A stretch of 64,000 nt of DNA from Paramoeba atlantica (Eukaryota > Protista > Discosea), in NCBI GenBank assembly GCA_977017575.1, contig CDRNVI010000071.1:124001-188000 (forward strand). The letters run 5' to 3'. Positions 1 through 61,266 of this stretch are shown here, piece by piece (position 1 is the stretch's first letter; each line of letters starts with the position of its first letter). The position numbers were made by a program, and so were the translations under genes. The notes under the pieces were generated by a model. It had not been told where the DNA came from. It made no database searches and worked only from the letters and a program-made list of their open reading frames with translations.

Positions 1-101
1 ACCTGGAACGCCAGCTTTCCGCACCCGTACACCTCCGGCGAGGACGATCCGCTCGATGTTTTTCTTCATCCTAGCATGCCATTCCGTGACATAATCCCAG
101 T

Positions 102-5997: not shown

Positions 5998-6045
5998 GAG
6001 TTTCAGATTTCATTCAGAAGGTGTAATATCATTAATAAAGATACA

Positions 6046-6635
6046 GTACATCAATACTAAAGATACAGTTTCTGTACCTTGTTGGTACATTTTCCCTTTA
6101 GTTCATCTTTTCTTTCCCCGGCAACGGGCATAATCTTACTGTTTTATATGCCCGTTGCCGGCCGGCACTAAGGCCGAAACTGTCCCTCTTTCTCGGCGAA
6201 GTAGGGGACGCGCTTCCACCCCATCACCCCTCCCCGGCTCACTCCTTGAGTGGGTTTTCTTCCCTCCCCGGCTTTCTTCCCTTCGCGCCCTTTTCTTCCC
6301 GGGGAGCCATGCGCCATGGTGGCCTCCCTTGAGGACCACTGGGCGTGGCTCTGCCTCGCATTATCGCGAGGCAGCGGTCGGTTGCAGTGCGCCCCTCCGG
6401 CTGCGTAAAGAGGTGGTGAGTTGCCTGGACCACCTCTACCGACTGGGACCGAGTCGGTTGCAGTGCGCCCCTCCGGCTGCGTAAAGAGAGGGCGAGTTGC
6501 CTGGACCCCCTCTACCGACAGAGTCCGAGCTAAACCCCCTTGGTGCGACATCCGTCAATACGGATTGTGCCGATGATATCGGCTGTCGCATCCAGGGCTG
6601 TATCTCTGCTCCAACGAGCGCATGAACATCAAAAC
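6046..6635 (+). mobile_element. SL-exon-headed dispersed element (family B, subfamily 2)
   Basis: AAAGATACAGTTTCTGTACCTTGTTG|GTAC at 6059-6088; homologous to the minus strand of 28837-29449; internal ~76-bp tandem duplication. Confidence 0.75.
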
Positions 6636-6903
6636 TGTGTACCGTCAATACTGCATACCATCACCACTGTAACCCCCTCGCTAATACACAAGTATGCACA
6701 TTTCTGTATATACACTGTACATACAGTAACGTTTCTGTATGAGTGTAAGTGTCTTGTTGTTGCAATTGCTGTTACAATGACGTAGTATTGACAAACACCG
6801 TACAGTCGTCAGCAATCAGAAATCTCTTTGTTCATTTCGCATCGTCTAAAAAACGAGCAGTCACCAGGAAGACCCATTCCGCAGAGTCACGAAACGCATT
6901 GCC

Positions 6904-18997: not shown

Positions 18998-20259
18998 CTA
19001 TACTTCACATATGCTTGTGCGATCGATCACCACCGTATGCAGAGTTTTAGGGAGAAGCGTCTTGTCAAGTACTCCGTGCAACTGAATGTTATTTTCCAAA
19101 CATAGTCTTTGCATGTGTGTAGGTAAGTTGTCAAAACGTACTTCGCCTTCGAAAGTATTGTCACTACAGTAAAGCATTTCTAACGACTGAGGTAGTCTCT
19201 GTAGATTAAGAGATCCAGTAAACATGTTCTGCCCCAGATGTTATGATCATACGCTCGTGGCGCAGAGATACGTCTCTCTGTGTGACGGCCGATACCATCG
19301 GCGCATGACCCGCATACGACGGGTGTCACACAGAGAGTGGAGTGCGAGGTAGGAGACGAGACGCCCATCGGTCATGCTACAGCACGTATAGCCATGGTTC
19401 ATGCTGCAACACGGTCAAGCCGTGGGTTCATGCTGTCAGATGGTCTATCGTGGATCATGATGCATCATGGGGAGGTCCGTTACCGCCGCACTCGCTACAG
19501 CATGTAGGGAGAGAGGGGTGCAAGTTCGCATCCCCTATACACGCATACAACGTGTCCTCCCGCTGTAGCACGCCCAGTGGTCCTCAAGGGAGGCCACCAT
19601 GGCGCATAGCTCCCGGGAGAAGAAAGCACGAGAAGGAGAGAGCCGGGGAGGGAAGATAGATATATGAGATTTCTCATACACGACGGTAAACAGGTCAAAT
19701 TTATGTTTCCTGAAAATTTGTTGTCATTAAGACTCAGATGTTGTAGACTCGCAGGAAGATGTGCTAGATCTACATTCCCTTCAAAACAATTCGCAGAACA
19801 ATAGAGTATCCTTAGCATGTGGGGCAAATGCTGCAGATCCAAATTACCCATAAATTCGTTCCTCCCGATTTCTATTTCACGCAAAGGTGTGGGCAAAATA
19901 CCTGTGGAGAATGGCCCTGTAAGTTTATTAACGTAAAAATTGCACGCGTATACGGTTTGTGGTAATGAATCCCACTGCGGTGTCCCTGTAAGTGCCATCA
20001 TATACCAATTGAGTCCCGTCACGTGTAAGTGATCGGCGCACGTTACTCCTGCCCACCTACAAGCTGGTGTGGATGTATTCCATGTGTGATGCGGATTTTT
20101 AATGTCCACAATGAATTGGACAAGCTCATATTCCTGAGGCAATTTCGCTCCTCGTACTTTTCCCGCCCGACTACGATACTGTGCGGCATCTGTATCATCA
20201 GCTGCGGTGTATGAACATAACAAGGTCGTGGATTTCAACGTGAAAATGCGTGAACTCAT
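18998..20259 (-). pseudogene. LRR family gene disrupted by a family B insertion
   Basis: LPQEYEL...TPACRWAGVTC N-cap and LP-type LRRs; removing 19242-19666 restores MRNLHLGQNMFTGSL. Confidence 0.8.
19242..19656 (-). mobile_element. Family B element, 5'-truncated (no SL head)
   Basis: Near-identical to 28837-29250; same terminus TATGATCATA. Confidence 0.85.
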
Positions 20260-28340: not shown

Positions 28341-28836
28341 CCCATTTAGCTCTTATGGATGTAGTCAGTCAGTATCAGCCAGTGATAACCCATGTCAGTT
28401 CGTGTGAGCTAGAGTTGCAAAACACTGGCTAACGGGGCTTCCGCGTTTTTTTGAAAAGTAATTTTTTCGAAAGAAAAATGCTCGCCCATGGATCTCCAAT
28501 TTAGTCATTTTTTTTCGATTTTGGACCACCGAGACCCCTTCATGTGGGATCATGCGACACAAAATCATTTCCCAGAATGCGAATAAAAGAGTGCAAATAA
28601 AAGAATACAAATAAAGAGTACGAATAAAAATCTTGTCGACAAATATTTGAATCCCATGAGAAACTTCTTCAAGAAGTTCATAGGTGAGGTTAGTGTTCAC
28701 AGTGCTCAATCGAGATCGCACAGCCTCCGGGAGCAAGCTTATTTTTACCACACCAGAAAGCTCAACATTGTTACTCAAATCAAGGCTGAAAAGTAGAGGA
28801 AGGCACGTCAGGTCTTCGAATTATTGTCTTCGAGGT

Positions 28837-29449
28837 TATGATCATACGCTCGTGGCGCAGAGATACGTCTCTCTGTGTGACGGCCGATACCATCAGCGCA
28901 TGACCCGCATACGACGGGTGTCACACAGAGAGTGGAGTGCGAGGTAGGAGACGAGTCGCCCATCGGTCATGCTACAGCACGTATAGCCATGGTTCATGCT
29001 GCAACACGGTCAAGCCGTGGGTTCATGCTGTCAGATGGTCTATCGTGGATCATGATGCATCATGGGGAGGTCCGTTACCGCCGCACTCGCTACAGCATGT
29101 AGGGAGAGAGGGGTGCAAGTTCGCATCCCCTATACACGCATACAACGTGTCCTCCCGCTGTAGCACGCCCAGTGGTCCTCAAAGGAGGCCACCATGGCGC
29201 ATAGCTCCCGGGAGAAGAAAGCACGAGAAGTAGAGAGCCGGGGAGGGAAGAAAGCTCACTCGAAGAGAGCGAGCCGGGGAGGGGTGAAGAGTGCGAAGTG
29301 CGTCCCCTACTTCCGCGACAAAGAGGGACAGTTCCAGCTAGCCGTCAGCCGGAAACGGGCATTTAAAAGTAAGAATATGCCCGTTTCCGGGAAAAGAAAG
29401 GAAGGGCTAGCAAAATGTACCAACAAGGTACAGAAACTGTATCTTTATT
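28837..29449 (-). mobile_element. SL-exon-headed family B element, 613 bp
   Basis: Minus strand starts AATAAAGATACAGTTTCTGTACCTTGTTG|GTACATTTTG; inserted at T|A with no TSD. Confidence 0.85.
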
Positions 29450-29577
29450 ACAGTTGCAGCAAATTCCTTGGAAGCAGCGTTAAATCTAAAGCTCCTACCA
29501 AAAAATTACGTCCGACTGAAAGACATTCCATTGATAAAGGAAGAAGCGTCAGACAAATATTCCCTGTGAATCTATTA

Positions 29578-30493
29578 AACCACCGTCCGGGTTATTATAC
29601 CTAGGAGGTATAATAAGTGTCCCTAGGTATAATAAGTGTCCCTAGGTATAATAACTTTGCTTTGCAAAAAGGATAAAAAAAATTTCGCGCCGCTTCGCGG
29701 CGCGTTCTTCTTCACATTGCCCACAACAAGTTATGATCCATTTGTAAGTTTCCCTCGCGCGCCTGGGGAAACGTGTGCGAGTGGGGGGGTAAGATTGTTT
29801 TCTGGGGGGTCAGGGGTAAAAGAATATGAAATGCCACGAATACATGTATTTTCGTGGTTACTATACCCCAACTGATCAAAATTCTTGACAATGGATGTAA
29901 TGCAAACAGATAGTGGCAGACGGTGACAGATGGTGGCAGACAAAACCATACACTTCTGCAGTACATCCAATGTCAATCTGATTTCTTGGTAATTTTCCCT
30001 CATCAAACGCAACATTAAAATTTACGCGCAGTGAGTGGAAAAGATTGCTGCGACAACAAAGAGCATGCACCAGCATGCTTTTACGTGTCCAGGAGATGAA
30101 TTAACCCTTTCGGAGTGTATATGTTTGGGCGATCGTCCGTAATCCCGTCTTTGTGGCATAAATCAGGGGGGGGATCAGAAAAATTGTAAAAAATGCAAGA
30201 TTTTGTCTACCAAAAAACAATGTGATCTATGTGCATTCGAAAATCCAAACGCAGATTACGTGCCTGCACGTTCATGAGCCCTGTTCGAGTGCTCTCGAAT
30301 GCGCTATAACTTTCCAAAATGGGCCAAGTTTTACAAATTTTAGTCCCCTCCCACATCAAAGTTTACTGTCCTGTAAGTTCTGCACCCGCCTCTGAAGGTA
30401 GGGGGCGGGAGGTATAATAAGGACCCTAGGGACACTTATTATACCTAGGAGGTACAATAGGTGTCCCTAGGTATAATAACCCGGACGGTGGTT
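29578..30493. mobile_element. MITE K, 916 bp, containing a Tc1-type end fragment
   Basis: TA|AACCACCGTCCGGGTTATTATACCTAGG...CCTAGGTATAATAACCCGGACGGTGGTT|TA. Confidence 0.9.
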
Positions 30494-36045: not shown

Positions 36046-37730
36046 ATGGGAAAACGACATAGATTAAACTTCCGTCATGTATCGCCCGAGCATGCATCCT
36101 ACGGCACACGGATTGTGAGCGCGCACGAAGTGCATCAAGGCAAGTCTATGAGGGAAACAGCATGTATGATGAATTGCGGAAAGAGCAGTGTTCATCGCTA
36201 TGTTGAGCGATTTGCCAAAACAGGTGATGTGCAACGGAAAAACTACGTACGTAGTCCTACGGTTATCACAGACGAGTTTAAGCAAACGCTTGTTACTCTT
36301 GTAGAGAGTGAACGTAGTAACCCGCACGGGTGTCCGGGATTTAAATGGGTGTACAAAAGACTTGATCGAAACCTCTACCCCTGCGGTCTCATGACTGTGA
36401 AACGAGCCTTGAAAAAGATGGGGTACGTCATGAAAACGATGATTCGAAAGCCTGTACTAACTCCTTTACATAAGGAAAACCGTCTGCGTCTCGCAGAATA
36501 TTTTGAAGGTCTGTCAGAGAGTCAACTTCAGAATGTCATCTGGACAGACGAAAAACTTTTTCGTTGCAGTACACACGGTAAAAAGATTACCTACCTCGCC
36601 CATAAGGACGATCCCGATCGTGAACCACCACCCCAAACTGATCGTTGGTATGGGGGGAAGGGTGTTCTTGTATGGATAGGTGTCAGCCTTAAATGGGGTA
36701 TACCACCTCATTGTTTTCACGAGTTTGGGGAGCACAACACCGTAAGTAATGACTCTTTTTTCAAGGTCATGAGTAAAAGGAACGGCTTTTTTAATTGGGT
36801 TCGGCGCCGACCATGTTCCATCATTGTTCTTGACAATGCACCGGGTCATGGGCAAACCTGTCGTGCGGGATTGCAAGCAGGCCTAAACATTATTGATTGG
36901 CCCTCAAAGTCACCTGACTTAAACTTGATAGAAAACTTGTGGTCAATCATGGATGACTACATTCATCATACCCCTGCCGGGTCGATGGGTAATTACCCAT
37001 TAGCGGGTCTGTGCGGGTAAATTACCCGGGTCTGTGACCCAGTTACCCGCACCGACCCACACAGACCCGCATCGGCGCACTAGCCATTAAATACAAAATA
37101 ATTTCCTCTCAAGTGTGCTGATTTGTAGGATTGGCACGGAATGCTCTATGTACAGAAACGGTATCTTTAGCGTTGAGGAATTCCTTCCATAAGAAGAATT
37201 CCCTCTACTGATTTTCTTGTGTCGCCCATCTATTTTTTTTATTTATTTTTTGGTGTGAACCCCCTAGGCCAACCAGAAGCCTACCCCTAACACCGCAATG
37301 GTACCAATTTTCTTTATTTTTTCTATGAATTTCATAGTTCTTTGCGTCCGAAAAATAGGCATGAATTGCGAGAGGCCATACCCAAGGTTATTGAATATCT
37401 CCTAACCGAAAAGCGGGATATCCTAGAGAAGACTCTGAAGAGCCTCCCAAAACGGTTAGAAGAGTTACGAAAGTGTAACGGAGGGGTTATTTCATACTAA
37501 ATAACTTTTTCAATGCCTTTTAAGACATTTTTATCCACATTTTCAAATGTGCAAATTTTGAAAAAAATCGTTTTTGTCGTACACACCCTACTTTTTAGAT
37601 GTGTTTAAATAGGCGCAAAATGTCGTTCCGATCATATTCGCGTCGAGATCTCTCTTTTGCAACAAAAATCAAATGAAACGGACACGTGGCACAAAAATGG
37701 CGGGTGTCCCGATATTGGTGATCCCCCCTG
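36046..37730 (+). mobile_element. Tc1-like transposon (DD32E); transposase interrupted by a ~370-bp insertion near 36960-37325
   Basis: HTH region, WTDEK, DNAPGH, WPSKSPDLNLIENLW; C-terminus resumes SSLRPKNR...GGVISY at 37500; end CCCCCCTG|TA. Confidence 0.85.
37150..37177 (-). other. Relict spliced-leader-like sequence
   Basis: Minus strand TCAACGCTAAAGATACCGTTTCTGTAC. Confidence 0.6.
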
Positions 37731-47314: not shown

Positions 47315-47882
47315 TGGAGCGTGGAGCCGCTATTTGATACAGCGTGGAGCTGCTCGCATGGAGTGTGGAGCCGCTGCGTTGTCAGCGTGGAGTCATTCAT
47401 GCAAATTTGATCGAGTGTGGAGCCGCTGTTTGATACAGTGTGGAGCCGCTCGCATGGAGCGTAGAGCCGCTGCGTTGTCAGCGTGGAGCCATTCATTCAA
47501 ATTTGATCGAGTGTGGAGCCGCTGTTTGATACAGTGTGGAGCCGCTCGCATGGAGTGTGGAGCCGCTGCGTTGTCAGCGTGGAGCCATTCATGCAAATTT
47601 AATCGAGTGTGGAGCCGCCGTTTGATATAGCGTGGAGCCGCTCGCATGGAGTGTGGAGCCGCTGTTTTATCAGCGTGGAGCCACTCATGCTAACTTGATG
47701 GAGCGTGGAGCCGCTGTTTGATACAGCGTGGAGCTGCTCGCATGGAGTGTGGAGCCGCTGCGTTGTCAGCGTGGAGCCATTCATGCTAACTTGATGGAGC
47801 GTGGAGCCGCTGTTTGATATAGCGTGGAGCCGCTCGCATGGAGTGTGGAGCCGCTGCGTTGTCAGCGTGGAGCCACTCATGC
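47315..47882. repeat. 96-bp minisatellite of GYGTGGAGCYGC subunits; continues at 50258-50335
   Basis: 96-bp period (47405 vs 47501). Confidence 0.85.
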
Positions 47883-47884
47883 TA

Positions 47885-50255
47885 CAGTGTACACAATTAT
47901 TAGTGTAAGAATAATTCGTAAAACAAAAATTAGTAAATTTTTAATTAGTAAAACATTTTGCAAAATTCAGGTTTTACACCTTACATTTTTTTTTATTTTT
48001 TTCGAAATTCTATTTTTTTTTACGAAAAGTTTTCAGATTACTATGTCGCTCGACATCGGAGAAATGATATTTCTCAGCAATCTGATAAGTGCTTCGTCTA
48101 GCAACACGCCCTCCGGAACTTCCCTAACAGATGAGCAAAAGAATTGGTTATTCGAACACACTCGTGGTGTTTTTCGGGGCGAAGATGTTCGACGAAAGTT
48201 TGAGCTGAAATTTCATCGAGGTCTCAGTTCAGCCGCTATGACCAAGTACAAGCGCATTGCGCGTTTGGATGACGTTGGTTCTCGTGGTCGAAAGAGTCTT
48301 CTCACGGAAGACGAAGAAGCTCAGTTGTTAAAAGCCTTTTTGCTGATTCGACGAACTGGCGTTGCTGTCGACGCAGCTCGCGTAGCCAAAATTGCGAAAG
48401 GTATCAGAGAACAGCGACAGACGGGATCCACAGTGCTGAACGGTGGCACGTTGAAATTTTCGATTTCTTGGGCAAATTCTTGGATGCACCGCAATGGCAT
48501 TAAGGTGCGACGGGCAACTACAACTCGAACTGTGACACCTATTGAAGTTGCACAGGCAGCTAATGTATTTTTTTCTCATTTACGTGGCCTAAAATCTTTC
48601 GATGTTCGAAAAGAGCTTGTGTTTAACGCGGACGAGTTTTTCGTTGGTCTTTCTCCAGAAGGCTCAAACATGAAGTGGACTTGGGAGCGAATTGACGTCG
48701 GAGAAAGTAGAAGTGTTGAAATCCAGAATCGCAAAGGGGGTTTCACTTGTACGATGCTAACGAATGCTGCTGGTGATTTGAATCTTCTACAATTCATTTT
48801 TCAGGGTACTTCCCGCATGTTTGTCGACGTTGAACACAATGATCGAATTCTACAGTGCGCTCGGACCGGATCTCACTTTCAAGATTCAAGCACTTGGGCC
48901 GAATTTCTCGAAAGATTTCTTGATATTGTTGATGTGGAGAGGAGCAAACTTTCAGACGTTAACACTCCGGCTCTCCATATCATAGATGGTGCAACACAAC
49001 ACAAAGACTCTGCCACGGCGCTTTCCTCCAAAAACTGCAAGTGTGTAGAAATTCCGCCTAAAATGACTCACGTTTTTCAGCCGGCGGATCAGTTTGTGAT
49101 ATCTGGGTTGAAAGTCAAGGCTCGAGCACTTTTCAATGATTATGTTGCTCGCATTTTTGCCCGTCAAAATGCCGAAGATGCCGTCCATGAAATGGTTATG
49201 TCTTCCGCTTCACATCTCCGAACGCAAAAAGTCACGCTAATTACCAAAGCTATGCGAGAAATTACTCGTGCTCAAGTCATTGCTTCTTGGAAAGTTGCGG
49301 GTATAACTGCCGCTCTTTTTGATGAAACTGAGATGTGTACTCCGACACGAGCCGACGCGTACGCATCCTTGCTCACCGAAAGCGAACGTGAAACAGTCAG
49401 CAGACATGGAGATGAGCTACAAGAAATGCACGTAAATGTTAACGTTGATGAAATCGAACCCCCAGAAGACCAAGATATTCGACAGGAAAATATTCAACAT
49501 ATTGTCTCTCTTCAACGCAAGAAACGAGGTTGTCCTCCCAACCCCAGTCTTTCAGAACGGCTTGAATCAAATAGAATTGAGAAGGAAAAAAAGAATCAAG
49601 CTCGTGAGGAAGGATACAAACTGAAAGAACAGACAAAAGGCATGAGTCGAGCTCAGAAGAAGTTATTCATTTCTCAAAAGAAGTGTGCAAAACTAGATCT
49701 ATGGGGTTTCGGGAAGACTTCTTCTGAAATTGAGACATCCGCCAGTGCCGAAAATACATTTTTCTCTGCAGCTACGTCTATATGCACGCCTATTCGTTCA
49801 ACTCCTCGAAAGGTCCAGTCAGATAAATACAAATGCATGCACAATAATCACATTGACTATAGCAGCGATTATGAAGACAGTTCGGAATTTGAAGGGGAAA
49901 GTGAAACGGAAAGCGAGCAAGATTTCTGTGAGCAATATTTCTATGAGCAAGATTTTTATTAATATTATTTTTTCTGGGTGTTTTTTACTCTGTGCTACAG
50001 ACACATATTACTTTCCACGCTTCTGATTTTTTTCTGAATCTCTGACTTTCTTGTTCGTTGTATTCCTATTTTTAAAAGACTTTCTCGCTCCTCGAACGCG
50101 AAACATCGCTCTCTTGTATTTAAGACATTTTATCAAGTTGGCAAATTTTTTGGGGGCAGCGCAAAAATTAGTAAAGCAAAAATTTGTGAATTTTTAATTA
50201 GTAAAACGTTTTTATTATTTTACAATAAAAGTTTTACTAATTTTTGCGAGCACTG
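47885..50255 (+). mobile_element. pogo-like DNA transposon
   Basis: TA|CAGTG...CACTG|TA, imperfect TIR; empty site CATGCTAACTTGATG visible in the flanking minisatellite. Confidence 0.9.
48043..49962 (+). CDS. Intact pogo/DDE_1 transposase with CENP-B-type HTH, 639 aa, DD33D
   Basis: KFSISWANSWMHR; FNADE; IIDGATQH; PPKMTHVFQPADQ. Confidence 0.88.
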   Translation: MSLDIGEMIFLSNLISASSSNTPSGTSLTDEQKNWLFEHTRGVFRGEDVRRKFELKFHRGLSSAAMTKYKRIARLDDVGSRGRKSLLTEDEEAQLLKAFLLIRRTGVAVDAARVAKIAKGIREQRQTGSTVLNGGTLKFSISWANSWMHRNGIKVRRATTTRTVTPIEVAQAANVFFSHLRGLKSFDVRKELVFNADEFFVGLSPEGSNMKWTWERIDVGESRSVEIQNRKGGFTCTMLTNAAGDLNLLQFIFQGTSRMFVDVEHNDRILQCARTGSHFQDSSTWAEFLERFLDIVDVERSKLSDVNTPALHIIDGATQHKDSATALSSKNCKCVEIPPKMTHVFQPADQFVISGLKVKARALFNDYVARIFARQNAEDAVHEMVMSSASHLRTQKVTLITKAMREITRAQVIASWKVAGITAALFDETEMCTPTRADAYASLLTESERETVSRHGDELQEMHVNVNVDEIEPPEDQDIRQENIQHIVSLQRKKRGCPPNPSLSERLESNRIEKEKKNQAREEGYKLKEQTKGMSRAQKKLFISQKKCAKLDLWGFGKTSSEIETSASAENTFFSAATSICTPIRSTPRKVQSDKYKCMHNNHIDYSSDYEDSSEFEGESETESEQDFCEQYFYEQDFY

Positions 50256-55233: not shown

Positions 55234-56811
55234 TTAGGCTAAGTTTCCAAGATGCGCGTCAAGAATCGACTGGTTCGATATTTCGGACGCATTGTACAAC
55301 ACTGTGATTTTACTGTCAGTAAGCCATAGACGTACATTTGCACCCTTTGCTTTAGAACGCAATTCTAGAGGCGGGGTGAAATACTTCATTGATTCGGCTG
55401 AAATCCAGTAAGGCGACTCAAACTTTTCATGTTGCATTACTTCATTCAGCTGATTTTGGACATGAGTGGGGAATTGCTTGCCACTGATCCCGCTGTACAT
55501 CACAAGGTGTTTCTCTTTGCGTGTTCGCGACCCTACTCTCCGTATGGCGCAAGGGTTCGAAGTTTGTTCTGCATTGTACCATTTCTTCTTCTTTTCCAAG
55601 AGTGTGAATGACTCTTCATCTTGATTGCTTCCACCTATCGTGATACCCACCTGTCCGGGAATAATATGCACTTGATCTTGGAAAGTGTTGCGAAGCGATT
55701 CTTCCGTGAGCCATATGTTGCTGCGGAACCCCTTTTCCTTGGCATGACCATGCAGTTCTGCTTGCCAGTGCAATGGGAGTGGTTTCGCGCCCCAGATGCC
55801 ACGCATGAGACCACGACGGGCAAATTCTATCAACCGGACAGGATCAGTGGTACTCTCCGCGTTGTAAAAGTGATGCGTTTCCTCTTTTCCTTGTTTGAAC
55901 GTGATTTTGACGATGCAGCATTTAGCCCCTTCCAGTGGCATGATGCGGCTGCCGTGTACAAGTGTAAGCGCTCTGTCTGTGATCCAATAGGGAGAAGATA
56001 ATCGATGTTCCTTGGAGAAGGCTTGAAGGACGCGCTGCAAGGGAACTCCTAACGGGATGCTTGTCAGTGCACTGCGATGAACGCGTTCAAAGAAATGAGT
56101 AACTACCTCTTGTGGGTCGGAAGTTTGCTGCGCGTTGTAGTACACGTATGGCTGAGTTGCGCTCGAAGCATCCGAAGCAGAAAAGTCGGGAGTACCATGC
56201 TCTGATATCACGGTATAAGAAGGTTTGTCAGCAAATGGAGGCTTGGAAAAAGTTACGCCTTTGCACATGGGAAGAGGGTTGATGTTTCCGTCCCCTATTA
56301 AGGGTAACTCATGCGCGGCAGCCCAAATATTCCACTCCCAATTTTCTTGTGCCGCACGCGTAGATAAATATAGGTCGTGCGGGGGACGAAACCTTCTTCC
56401 CGTCATGGCATTTACACACGATTTAGATTTCCGTAAATACTTGCCAATTTTTTGCACCATGCTGGTGGCCGCTCCAGGGTCGGAAGTTTGTTCCAGATTG
56501 TACCACATCTTGTTTTCAACAATTTCATCAGATTCTTCCCTTGAGGATATATCAGCATTTGTTTTTAATGTAGCTTTTGAGGCTTGTGACACATTATTAT
56601 TTCCATCAAGCTCGGAGACAACTGAATTTCCAGATTGAATAGTGATGCACCCACCGGTTATAGCCTGTAGCTGTACTTCGGTAACCCAATATGGAGAATT
56701 GAATCCCTTTTCTTGGGCAACCTGAGCTAAATTCTTACAGAAAGGAGCAGGGAAAGGCTCCCCACTCACACCGCGGAGCGGCAGATAGCGCAGAGCACAA
56801 ACAAATCGCAT
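55234..56811 (-). CDS. Tc38/p38-family (ArdC-N-like) kinetoplast ssDNA-binding protein with five repeats
   Basis: Five SPYW(I/V)/NIW...YNA(E/Q)QT-type repeats. Confidence 0.72.
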   Translation of the reverse strand: MRFVCALRYLPLRGVSGEPFPAPFCKNLAQVAQEKGFNSPYWVTEVQLQAITGGCITIQSGNSVVSELDGNNNVSQASKATLKTNADISSREESDEIVENKMWYNLEQTSDPGAATSMVQKIGKYLRKSKSCVNAMTGRRFRPPHDLYLSTRAAQENWEWNIWAAAHELPLIGDGNINPLPMCKGVTFSKPPFADKPSYTVISEHGTPDFSASDASSATQPYVYYNAQQTSDPQEVVTHFFERVHRSALTSIPLGVPLQRVLQAFSKEHRLSSPYWITDRALTLVHGSRIMPLEGAKCCIVKITFKQGKEETHHFYNAESTTDPVRLIEFARRGLMRGIWGAKPLPLHWQAELHGHAKEKGFRSNIWLTEESLRNTFQDQVHIIPGQVGITIGGSNQDEESFTLLEKKKKWYNAEQTSNPCAIRRVGSRTRKEKHLVMYSGISGKQFPTHVQNQLNEVMQHEKFESPYWISAESMKYFTPPLELRSKAKGANVRLWLTDSKITVLYNASEISNQSILDAHLGNLA

Positions 56812-60063: not shown

Positions 60064-60448
60064 GATTAGTAAAGGAGAGATGTGATAAGGAGAGATAACG
60101 CAAAGAATGCAAAAATTTTCTAAAAAAATATTTATCGTTTTATTTAACTACTTTCATCCAAAATTGGTCAAAAATGATTAAAGCGGGGGGTGGATCAATG
60201 CTCTTCTGGGGAGTTTCATTTCACTTTCATACCGGGCGAGCCGGCAGAGCATTTGCCTGTTGTACGACGACCGTTATCAACGGCCATTGGAATCCATAGT
60301 GTAGACCGCCACTGCGAGCCAGTGCCAAATGCTGCCAGCCACTGCGAGCCAAAAACGTCCTCTGAGAGCCTTTCTCCCTGAAGCCAAACCATCTGGTTAC
60401 CCGAACATGTAAGTCCTTCATGTCTTGAAGGTACGCTTCAAGGCAATA

Positions 60449-60767
60449 CCGTATCCCTCCCAGTAAGAGAATGAGTTTTGGGTCGAAATGGCCAAATCTC
60501 TCTTACTGGGGGGGTATGATTTTTTGGCCAGTTTCCTCTTTTCTCCCAACTTTTTTGACTATTTTTTCTTCTGAAAACGTGTTAAAACGCTTCTTTGGGT
60601 TACTCCCGAGGCCCCCAACATGCAGACACCCACCCCCTACCCCTTATACGCCTCCTGTTGGGCTCCCAAACCAAATCTCTCTTACTGGGGGTCAGCCCAA
60701 AAAGGGCCAAATCTCTCTTACTGGGGGGGTACCTTACTGAGGGGGGTACCTTACTGGGGGTATACGG
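60449..60767. mobile_element. MITE G (Tc2/pogo-like CCGTA termini)
   Basis: TA|CCGTATCCCTCCCAGTAA...TTACTGGGGGTATACGG|TA. Confidence 0.8.
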
Positions 60768-61266
60768 TACAGGGGGTATACGGTAATCAACAAATGTAAA
60801 CTTTTTCCAGTTTTTGTATCTCTTTCCACCGAAAATACAAACCGCGGTCTCGATGCGGTCTCGCAGCCCCTCAACTACCGCGTTTAACGAAGACCCTAAA
60901 AAAGAAAATTAATTTCTATGTCATTTTTCTCAATTTTGTGTCATACGCTGCCATACAGGTATGGCAGGCGCCCCTGTATACTGCCGTACGCTGTCAAACG
61001 CTGCCAGCCACTGCGAGCCAAAACTGCATGGGTTCCATTACAGCGCATTCAACGCCGGTCGTATGCAGGGATTCGGCCTATGGCCACGCCACGTGGTCCT
61101 CAAGGGAGACCCTGCAATTCTCTCAAAAATTGTCCCAAAAATTTTGTCCCAAAAATCACGAATGGGGTTGTAGGTACAGCGTTTGCAAAAGTTTGTGAAC
61201 GTTTTATTGTAAACCACATACCCATTTAACATCCCCCCCTGTATGCTATCAAGGTATAGGTATGTT

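What the first reader, a model, noticed from the sequence alone, without database searches (positions are those of the whole stretch)
6046..6635. Spliced-leader-headed mobile element family (SL-RNA-derived SINE or orphon)
Seen: copies at 6046-6635 (+), 29449-28837 (-) and 19656-19242 (-, 5'-truncated). The two complete copies start AAAGATACAGTTTCTGTACCTTGTTG|GTACATTTT, then ~550 bp of structured non-coding sequence with a shared 3' end. Known: AGATACAGTTTCTGTAC...TTG|GTA matches the conserved core and donor of kinetoplastid SL RNA, whose genes are normally tandemly arrayed. CRE/SLACS/CZAR retrotransposons target the SL exon near nt 11. Inference: this is a mobile family derived from SL RNA or from an SL-targeting retroelement. 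The 28837 copy keeps exactly 29 nt of exon and has no upstream promoter. 5' truncation with a fixed 3' end suggests an RNA intermediate. It could also supply ectopic SL donors or decoys.
Basis: partly seen in the sequence, partly recalled or inferred. Interest (0 to 1): 0.9.

Follow-up and report, generated by a model that had tools for sequence, protein, structure and literature searches.

The report
Spliced-leader-headed hitchhiker retroposon family
The ~600-base repeat is a young, non-coding jumping element of a kinetoplastid protist; it is most likely copied by R2-like retrotransposons, starts with the last 28 bases of the cell's spliced leader, and is neither a spliced-leader RNA gene nor a relic of one.

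Summary
The full copies start with spliced-leader (SL) nt 11-38 followed by GTACATTTT.

It is not an SL RNA gene or orphon. The 38 true SL genes lie in tandem arrays with 1.45-2.9-kb spacing. They carry the full AACTTTAACG... exon and a GTATGAGAAG intron.

The family has about 210 SL-headed copies plus truncated ones. It has no conserved ORF, no tRNA-like head, no poly(A) and no TSD.

It shares three things with autonomous R2-type (RT plus R2-like C-terminal region) retrotransposons of this genome:
- a covarying 3'-terminal hairpin;
- a fixed insertion register inside leucine-rich-repeat genes;
- the SL head.

Hundreds of unrelated retrocopies carry SL ending exactly at exon nt 38. Six copies of this family carry SL joined 14 nt further in, just after an internal pyrimidine-AG site. 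The head is therefore best read as a mark of trans-spliced RNA templates.

A contig from another sample lacks window copy 2 precisely: an empty site with 2 bp lost. So the family moved recently.

Two points stay open: why heads start at nt 11, and where the SL|GTAC junction arose.

This scan had already found the same family and phenomenon in other windows of this genome.

The parts
6058..6634 (+). Copy 1, subfamily B, 577 bp, full length. SL head (exon nt 12-38) at 6058-6084. The body starts GTACATTTTCCC at 6085. An internal 76-bp tandem duplication lies at 6377-6529. The 3' end is ...GCATGAACATCAAAA.
6033..6057 (+). Stuttered 5' junction of copy 1. It holds a partial head AATAAAGATACAG, then about 12 bases (GTACATCAATAC) that recur imperfectly just after the 3' end (6639-6651). 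I read this as a template-switch or re-priming scar.
   Evidence: The same kind of stutter is seen at L002, L009, L010, L012, L046 and L059.
28835..29449 (-). Copy 2, subfamily A, 615 bp, full length. It has one unmatched A (29449), the SL head nt 11-38 (29448-29421), and a body running from 29420 to ...GATCATAAC at 28835. It is an insertion polymorphism.
   Evidence: In one search a 3541-nt contig from run X1 skips 28835-29449 and has 2 bases (AC on the + strand) in their place.
19240..19656 (-). Copy 3, subfamily A, 5'-truncated to the last ~417 bp, 98.8% identical to copy 2. It interrupts an LRR ORF three codons before the conserved Asn (..MRNLIYL^GQNMFTGSLNL..).
28834..28963 (-). 3' structured domain of copy 2. 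A long stem encloses two hairpins (three-way junction). It is followed by TATCTCTG, a terminal hairpin, and CATGA plus a short A-rich end. This is the presumed recognition signal for the reverse transcriptase.
60214..61116 (-). D/E-subfamily 3' fragment (the last ~150 bp of an element) in two pieces, 61116-61035 and 60288-60214, split by a ~746-bp unrelated insertion.
1..47 (+). C-subfamily fragment, 91% identical to positions 438-484 of the L044 copy. It is cut by the window edge.

Best explanation
The repeat is a non-autonomous, non-coding retroposon family with at least seven subfamilies. About 210 copies carry an SL head, and many more are 5'-truncated.

Copying machinery. I infer that it is copied in trans by R2-type non-LTR retrotransposons of the same kinetoplastid genome. 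Their reverse transcriptase would recognise the element's folded 3' end and prime on a nick in the target, often at one fixed register of leucine-rich-repeat coding repeats. It would copy towards the 5' end and often stop early. Copies therefore share a 3' end, have ragged 5' ends, and show no poly(A) and no target duplication.

The SL head. The 28-nt 'SL' head is not a gene part. It is exon nt 11-38 of the host spliced leader, fused at the exact exon end to the element body. This is the mark that trans-splicing leaves on an RNA. So the family, like the autonomous elements and hundreds of other retrocopies here, descends from RNA that carried the spliced leader.

Shown:
- the anatomy of the element;
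- its distinctness from SL genes;
- the shared 3' hairpin and shared target register;
- the empty-site allele;
- the second SL junction at an internal AG.

Inferred:
- mobilisation in trans by the R2-like enzyme;
- trans-splicing as the source of the original SL|GTAC junction.
For: 1. True SL genes are different. There are 38 copies in tandem arrays, with a full 38-nt exon AACTTTAACGATAAAG...GTTG, a GTATGAGAAG intron and a strongly folding RNA (z -6.4).
2. The head ends exactly at exon nt 38 on unrelated bodies.
   - A 4.85-kb autonomous element starts ..ATAAAGATACAGTTTCTGTACCTTGTTG|AATTATTTTC.
   - 447 genome sites have SL nt 7-38 followed by many different sequences.
3. Stacked relic leaders occur at L013 575-614 and L074 3213-3279.
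4. Six copies of this family have SL|CCCTTCC. The join lies right after the element's own ..TTTTGCTAG.
5. A second autonomous family (L074) has RVT_1 plus zf-RVT, and its best solved relative is Bombyx R2, aligned from the RT through the C-terminal region (E 2.4e-36). The RT ORF of the 4.85-kb family has RVT_1 and zf-RVT.
6. The 3' terminal hairpin is shared by subfamilies A, B, A3, C, D, E and G and by the 4.85-kb autonomous family; an equivalent hairpin with a longer loop is seen by eye in the L074 family.
   - 92.7% of cells pair.
   - 3 of 5 pairs show compensatory changes.
   - 0 of 500 shuffles reach the observed value.
7. The target register is shared.
   - 14 of 40 distinct 3' junctions are followed by LRR N-x-[FLIMV]-x-[GE], against a 2.2% background.
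   - Both copies of the 4.85-kb autonomous family sit in the same register.
8. Movement is recent. Copies are 96-100% identical, and run X1 holds the exact empty site of copy 2.
9. There is no conserved ORF, no tRNA-like head and no Rfam match.
Against: - No source copy with an AG acceptor directly before GTACATTTT exists in the assembly. Every copy that reaches GTAC is already preceded by SL. So for the main isoform the trans-splicing event is only inferred, and it must be old or its source is lost.
- Heads start at nt 11 rather than nt 1. The mode is 28 nt, the maximum 33. The trans-splicing model alone does not explain this.
- The body begins GTA, like the SL intron, and forms a 6-bp hairpin with SL nt 28-33. 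This could hint at an SL RNA origin.
- No raw RNA reads were available. Neither the element's RNA, its 5' end, nor the true SL on mRNAs was seen directly.
- The partner relation rests on shared motifs and a shared target, not on long sequence homology.
Confidence: 0.78

Rival explanations
1. SL-RNA-derived SINE. The head was copied from an unspliced SL RNA (exon plus the first intron bases) and fused to a retrotransposon tail, as tRNA, 7SL or 5S heads are in classical SINEs.
For: - The junction reads TTG|GTA as in the SL gene.
- TGTACC/GGTACA forms a hairpin like the top of SL RNA stem-loop I.
- No AG-bearing source copy was found.
Against: - Only 3 intron bases are shared (GTACATTTT against GTATGAGAAG).
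- Exon nt 1-10, the SL promoter and stem-loops II and III are all absent.
- Other families carry the same head joined to bodies that do not start with GT. With ten or more such bodies, one starting GTA by chance is unremarkable.
- T-runs inside the body argue against pol III.
Confidence: 0.08
2. Template-jump chimera. The R2-type reverse transcriptase reached the 5' end of an element RNA starting GTACATTTT and jumped onto a free SL exon (the step-1 trans-splicing intermediate) or another SL-bearing RNA. This is analogous to U6/L1 chimeras. The chimera then became the founder of the family.
For: - The junction lies exactly at the exon's 3' end without needing an AG.
- 5' junctions show stutters and re-priming typical of template switching.
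- That R2 enzymes jump between templates is from my own knowledge, not tested here.
Against: - The minor isoform joins exactly after a pyrimidine tract plus AG. That points to real trans-splicing of this family's transcripts.
- The same exact junction on more than 460 other retrocopies is more simply explained by normal mRNA processing.
- Sequence alone cannot separate the two readings for the founder event.
Confidence: 0.08
3. Relic of an SL-gene-specific CRE/SLACS/CZAR-type insertion. In this reading the SL nt 11-38 is the downstream half of a split SL gene, carried along by read-through.
For: - The head starts at nt 11, next to the classical CRE/SLACS insertion point (nt 11/12, from my own knowledge; PMC12278014 says only the same relative position in SL RNA genes).
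- The mobilising elements are of the RLE/R2 group.
Against: - The SL piece lies at the 5' end of the element and stops at the exon end. It is followed by non-intron sequence.
- Copies lie in LRR genes and other sites, not in SL genes.
- There is no poly(A) and no TSD.
- Some heads reach nt 6 and nt 8.
- Other families mostly carry SL reaching at least nt 7-10.
Confidence: 0.03
4. The ~600 bp is the tandem SL repeat unit, and the dispersed copies are DNA-level duplications.
For: None beyond the shared 28 nt.
Against: - SL arrays have 1.45-2.9-kb units with no homology to the element body.
- Copies have unique flanks, a fixed 3' end and an exact empty site.
Confidence: 0.01

Closest known systems
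Non-autonomous partners of non-LTR retrotransposons (R2 SIDEs in Drosophila; RIME/NARTc of ingi/L1Tc in trypanosomes)
   Same: It is short and non-coding. It shares the 3' recognition end and the target preference of an autonomous element. It has 5' truncations and multiple subfamilies.
   Different: No long homology to the autonomous element exists, so it is not a simple internal deletion. Its 5' end is a host spliced-leader fragment rather than the element's own 5' UTR or the Pr77 signature.
SL-tagged retrogenes of dinoflagellates (relic spliced leaders at the 5' end of retroposed genes; PMC5585692, PMC12014239)
   Same: The DNA-encoded leader ends exactly at the exon end. Stacked relic leaders record repeated rounds of trans-splicing and retroposition.
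   Different: Here the tagged sequences are transposable elements and their hitchhikers in a kinetoplastid. They have no poly(A) tail and insert with a site preference. The leader is mostly cut to nt 11-38.
CRE/SLACS/CZAR clade (PMC12278014)
   Same: The likely mobilising enzymes carry an RT and match R2 through its C-terminal region, and both are linked to the spliced leader.
   Different: CRE-clade elements insert into SL RNA genes at a fixed exon position. They end in poly(A) and make TSDs. This family and its partners carry SL at their own 5' end, insert in LRR genes and elsewhere, and have no poly(A) or TSD.
Classical SINEs (tRNA-, 7SL- or 5S-headed)
   Same: It is a short, abundant, non-coding element with a LINE-type 3' signal, copied in trans.
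   Different: There is no pol III-type head or internal promoter (no tRNA-like sequence, and T-runs lie inside). The head is a fragment of a pol II trans-spliced leader.

Membership tests
SL RNA gene / orphon | Complete leader exon (nt 1-38) with an upstream promoter region | tested here: not met
   Heads are 12-33 nt with a mode of 28 (nt 11-38). Upstream sequence differs in every copy.
SL RNA gene / orphon | Conserved intron (GTATGAGAAG...) with SL RNA stem-loops | tested here: not met
   The body reads GTACATTTT... and shares only GTA with the intron. It shows no similarity to the intron of the 38 true genes.
SL RNA gene / orphon | Tandem array organisation | tested here: not met
   Copies are dispersed over many contigs with unique flanks.
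CRE/SLACS/CZAR clade | Insertion at a fixed position inside SL RNA genes | tested here: not met
   Flanks are LRR coding repeats (14 of 40), microsatellite, other elements and so on.
CRE/SLACS/CZAR clade | Encodes RT and a restriction-like endonuclease | tested here: not met
   The family has no conserved ORF. The autonomous neighbours do encode an RT and match R2 through the C-terminal region.
CRE/SLACS/CZAR clade | Poly(A) 3' end and target-site duplication | tested here: not met
   Ends are ...CATAACC...CATCAAAA or ...AAACAAA. The one empty site shows 2 bp lost and no duplication.
Non-autonomous R2-type retroposon | Shares the 3' terminal RNA signal with an autonomous RLE-type element | tested here: met
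   CTCTG-hairpin-CATGA-A-rich end shared with the 4.85-kb autonomous family (L073); an equivalent hairpin with a longer loop in the L074 family was seen by eye but misaligned. Covariation in 3 of 5 pairs, 0 of 500 shuffles.
Non-autonomous R2-type retroposon | Same target site as the autonomous element | tested here: met
   The LRR register is the same for the short copies and for two copies of one autonomous family. Only those two autonomous junctions were available.
Non-autonomous R2-type retroposon | Mobilised in trans by that element's protein | not testable with these tools
   This needs binding or retrotransposition assays.
Classical SINE | Head derived from a pol III transcript with an internal promoter | tested here: not met
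   No tRNA-like sequence. No Rfam match. T4 runs lie inside the body.
SL-tagged retrocopy (dinoflagellate type) | DNA-encoded leader ending at the exact exon end, at a site that is a splice acceptor in the source | tested here: inconclusive
   The exon end is exact in all copies. The acceptor is shown for the minor isoform (internal ..GCTAG|) but not found for the main SL|GTAC junction.

The most novel reading that the evidence does not exclude
The sharp start at leader nt 11 may be a mechanistic footprint. In non-GTAC families, 40 copies start at nt 11 against 4 at nt 12, and nt 11 is the mode in this family. Two candidate mechanisms: a capped ~10-nt RNA stub could be left on the cDNA and prime second-strand synthesis, as in hepadnaviruses; or a cap-bound protein could block the enzyme. 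A further possibility is that the retained SL 11-38 plus GGTACA hairpin is a functional mimic of SL RNA stem-loop I, used by the non-coding element RNA for stability, export or RNP assembly.
Probability: 0.12. Interest if true: 0.8.

Novelty: new variant of a known kind. Interest (0 to 1): 0.55.

Why it matters
- It shows how mobile elements get their 5' end in a genome where every mRNA is trans-spliced. Both the autonomous elements and their non-coding hitchhikers carry the host leader. Known trypanosomatid retroposons instead use their own Pr77 5' signature.
- The leader tag dates and orders rounds of retroposition through stacked relics and alternative acceptors. It also marks hundreds of retrocopies.
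- The family is active or was active very recently, as the polymorphic insertion shows.
- It preferentially breaks a large LRR gene family at one codon register, so it may shape that family's turnover.
- I found no paper describing SL-headed retroposons in kinetoplastids in the searchable library. The nearest published analogue is the dinoflagellate SL-relic retrogene.
- This scan has already reported the same family and phenomenon from other windows, so this window adds detail rather than a first sighting. The added details are the empty site, the second SL junction, the head-length classes and the absence of any SL-less source copy.

Tried and rejected
- Rfam at gathering thresholds on the whole window, and at permissive E-values on copy 1 and on a true SL gene. 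No SL RNA, ribozyme (HDV-like) or other family matched; only chance-level hits appeared.
- Search for a source copy with AG directly before GTAC[A/T]TTTT: 0 hits.
- Search for GTACATTTT... not preceded by SL: 8 hits. Seven are SL junctions missing one G, and one is unrelated.
- Long homology between the short family and the two autonomous families: none beyond the SL head. Two short motifs appeared, GGCCTCCCT[T/C]GAGGACC and CGTCGTATGCG, at E 0.07-1, which is suggestive only.
- RNA evidence: no raw RNA run exists for this organism in the index. One 'RNA?' contig set (X5) only covers the 3' junction of copy 3. Expression and RNA 5' ends could not be assessed.
- Clade placement of the autonomous partner: relatives in the protein database are unnamed. 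Some carry UCH or C48 peptidase domains as in NeSL-like elements. No named CRE/SLACS hit was returned, so I call it only 'R2-type'; the endonuclease itself was not checked.
- TSD search on 27 two-sided copies: no consistent duplication.
- tRNA scan of an SL repeat unit: none found.
Head and target statistics therefore rest on about 50 sampled copies plus whole-genome pattern counts.

Full report
**1. Observation**

The three copies exist.
- Copy 1 (+) has leader bases at 6058-6084 and ends at 6634.
- Copy 2 (-) spans 29449-28835.
- Copy 3 (-) spans about 19656-19240 and lacks the first ~195 bp.

Copies 2 and 3 are 98.8% identical. Copy 1 belongs to another subfamily. It shares the first ~290 bp (83% identity) and the last ~90 bp (74%) with copy 2, but has a different middle.

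The SL core with donor-like GTA occurs twice in the window, where 0 are expected. It occurs 248 times in the 45.7-Mb genome, against 0 for the reversed control.

Two further fragments of the family lie at 61116-61035 plus 60288-60214 (-) and at 1-47 (+).

The window also encodes a Tc-38-like protein. Together with the SL core, this places the organism among kinetoplastids.

**2. The true spliced leader genes are something else**

Thirty-eight loci carry ...GTT AACTTTAACGATAAAGATACAGTTTCTGTACCTTGTTG|GTATGAGAAGCTTCGAAC....
- Most lie in head-to-tail arrays. Spacing is 2.56 kb on contigs C97 and C107, 1.45 kb on C3, and 2.6-2.9 kb on C11.
- The 119-nt transcript folds into three stem-loops with z = -6.4.
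- The repeat units have no similarity to the ~600-bp element beyond the leader.

It also shows that the dispersed family is not a set of SL genes or orphons. The family holds exon nt 11-38 at most (mode 28 nt, range 12-33). It has a different upstream sequence at every locus. After the exon it shares only GTA with the intron.

**3. The leader head is a genome-wide mark of retrocopies**

A 4.85-kb autonomous element (two copies, 98% identical, with an RT ORF) starts ..ATAAAGATACAGTTTCTGTACCTTGTTG|AATTATTTTC.

Whole-genome pattern counts:

| Pattern | Count |
|---|---|
| SL nt 7-38 followed by many different sequences | 447 |
| SL\|AATTATTTTC | 107 |
| SL\|GTAC (248 core+GTA hits minus 38 true genes) | about 210 |

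Stacked leaders occur too.
- L013 has A23|SL(7-38)|SL(23-38)|body. This is the pattern expected if a copy was trans-spliced again at the ACAG inside its own head.
- L074 has SL(18-38), then 18 nt, then SL(15-38), then the body.

Within the family under study, six copies have the leader joined 14 nt further in. They read ...CCTTGTTG|CCCTTCC, directly after the element's own pyrimidine-rich ...TTTTGCTAG. That is what trans-splicing of a transcribed genomic copy, followed by a new round of retroposition, would produce.

These facts make trans-spliced RNA the best source for the head. The closest published parallel is the relic leaders of dinoflagellate retrogenes (PMC5585692, PMC12014239).

**4. 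What the element is**

- It has no conserved sense ORF. The longest are 19-81 codons and differ between subfamilies.
- It has no tRNA-like head and no Rfam match.
- At least seven subfamilies (A, A2/A3, B, C, D, E, G) share a 5' module. This comprises the leader, GTAC[A/T]TTTT, a 14-15-bp hairpin CCGGAAACGGGCAT/ATGCCCGTTTCCGG, and a conserved GGCCTCCCTTGAGGACC box.
- They also share a 3' module. The middle differs between subfamilies.
- The 3' module folds as a long stem enclosing two hairpins. Thirteen of 28 predicted pairs show compensatory changes among eight sequences.
- The very end is [A/T][A/T]TCTCTG, then a 5-6-bp hairpin, then CATGA and 6-10 A-rich bases. There is never a poly(A).

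**5. The likely copying machinery**

The ORF2 of a second autonomous family (L074) has RVT_1 and zf-RVT. Its best solved relative is the Bombyx R2 protein, aligned from the RT through the C-terminal region of R2, E 2.4e-36. The RT ORF of the 4.85-kb family also has RVT_1 and zf-RVT. So these are R2-type elements, the broad group that also holds CRE/SLACS. The endonuclease motifs themselves were not examined.

Their database relatives are unnamed, so I do not assign a clade.

The 4.85-kb family ends in the same CTCTG-hairpin-CATGA-A-rich module as the short family; the L074 family shows an equivalent hairpin with a longer loop, seen by eye.
- In an alignment of nine short-family sequences and two autonomous ones, 92.7% of cells pair.
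- Three of five pairs show changes on both sides.
- No shuffle out of 500 reaches the observed pairing or covariation.
- Slid controls collapse.
- One of the two autonomous rows (the L074 family) was misaligned and counted against the structure.

The insertion site is shared as well. Fourteen of 40 distinct 3' junctions of the short family are followed by an LRR N-x-[FLIMV]-x-[GE] motif. The Asn is usually the fourth codon after the junction. The same test on random positions gives 2.2%. Both copies of the 4.85-kb autonomous family sit in the same register, as does window copy 3.

Trans-mobilisation itself is inferred, not shown.

**6. Proof of recent movement, and the insertion footprint**

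Logan contigs of run X1 come from the same coded organism but another sample. They include a 3541-nt single-copy contig that joins window 28834 to 29450 with two other bases in between. This is the exact empty site of copy 2.
- The insertion is 615 bp.
- There is no target duplication.
- Two target bases are lost or replaced.

Across 27 two-sided copies I saw no consistent TSD.

Several 5' junctions carry stuttered partial heads, sometimes with a repeated bit of target. They are window 6033-6057 and loci L002, L009, L010, L012, L046 and L059. I read them as re-priming or template-switch scars.

Many copies are 99-100% identical.

**7. What remains unexplained**

(a) The source of the main junction. 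No copy in the assembly has an AG acceptor before GTACATTTT. Every copy that reaches GTAC is already preceded by leader sequence. The SL|GTAC junction is shared by all subfamilies and so is old. For the main isoform, the trans-splicing origin is an inference from the other families and from the minor isoform. A template jump onto a free SL exon, or an SL RNA origin, cannot be excluded for the founder event.

(b) Heads start at nt 11. In families whose body does not start with G, the whole-genome counts are:

| Head length | Copies |
|---|---|
| 29 nt or more | 422 |
| exactly 28 nt | 40 |
| exactly 27 nt | 4 |

So nt 11 is a discrete end class across the genome. In the GTAC family it is the dominant one. 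Two sampled copies extend to nt 8 and nt 6 with the correct leader bases.

Possible causes are a block to cDNA synthesis near the cap, a short capped RNA primer left for second-strand synthesis, an RNA processing site, or an internal start. None could be tested, because no raw RNA reads are available.

The closeness to the classical CRE/SLACS insertion point (nt 11/12, from my own knowledge) is noted. I have no evidence that it is more than coincidence.

(c) The leader part pairs with the body in the predicted consensus fold: TGTACC with GGTACA across the junction, and ACAGTTTC with G[A/G]AACTGT about 100 nt downstream. These pairs do not covary, so they say nothing firm.

**8. Comparison with known kinds, and verdict**

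- The element works like the non-autonomous partners of non-LTR elements (R2 SIDEs, RIME/NARTc). It carries a leader tag like dinoflagellate retrogenes.
- It is not an SL RNA gene.
- It is not a member of the CRE/SLACS/CZAR clade as defined in PMC12278014: SL-gene insertion, poly(A) and TSD are all not met.
- It is not a classical pol III SINE.
- The donor/decoy idea is unlikely. The element lacks exon nt 1-10 and the conserved intron start. This was not tested.

I rate it a new variant of a known kind.

The same family and the general phenomenon were already reported by this scan from other windows of this genome. My independent analysis agrees with those notes. It adds the empty-site allele, the second SL junction, the head-length classes and the absence of any SL-less source copy.

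Noticed in passing
window 29575-30492: A 918-bp element with 33-bp terminal inverted repeats (TATTAAACCACCGTCCGGGTTATTATACCTAGG) and internal sub-repeats of the same motif. It is MITE-like. It is absent from the same X1 contig that lacks copy 2 (the joint has 3 ambiguous bases, perhaps a 3-bp TSD), so it is a second polymorphic insertion.
   Followed up: partly
L013:575-614 (+) and L074:3213-3279 (+): Stacked relic leaders. L013 reads A23|SL nt 7-38|SL nt 23-38|body. L074 reads SL nt 18-38, then 18 nt, then SL nt 15-38, then the body of an autonomous R2-like element. I read them as repeated rounds of trans-splicing and retroposition, once with 18 nt of old flank carried along.
   Followed up: partly
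genome-wide pattern counts: In SL-headed families other than this one, heads of 29 nt or more number 422, heads of exactly 28 nt number 40, and heads of exactly 27 nt number 4. Leader nt 11 is therefore a discrete, unexplained 5'-end class.
   Followed up: partly
G000 C74:104184-121533 (L019, L020): Two family-A copies with identical flanks (C74:109789-110388 and 117083-117682, minus strand) lie between true SL RNA genes of one array. There the unit spacing grows from about 2.7 to 7.3 kb, so the SL array itself has been invaded and the invaded unit duplicated.
   Followed up: no
G000 C21:272-11698 and C22:137441-155715: SL|AATTATTTTC junctions recur every ~2.28 kb in tandem. A leader-headed unit has apparently been amplified as a tandem array. 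Its content is unknown because no sequence could be fetched.
   Followed up: no
window 6305-6321 and 29190-29206; L073 (minus strand) about 7284-7268: The 17-nt box GGCCTCCCT[T/C]GAGGACC is conserved in all short subfamilies. It also occurs about 110 nt into the 4.85-kb autonomous element (E 0.07). It may be a shared RNA signal or a chance match.
   Followed up: partly
window 60289-61034: About 746 bp of unrelated repeat-rich sequence (CCCCCAGTAAGAGAGATTTGG motifs) is inserted into the D/E-type fragment.
   Followed up: no
window 36046-37020 (+) and 47824-49962 (+): ORFs with DDE transposase domains (DDE_3/Tc3-like and DDE_1). DNA transposons share this window with the retroelements.
   Followed up: no
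window 55234-56811 (-): An ORF with two Tc-38 (p38) domains (E 3e-22), a kinetoplastid-specific family. I used it only to place the organism.
   Followed up: no
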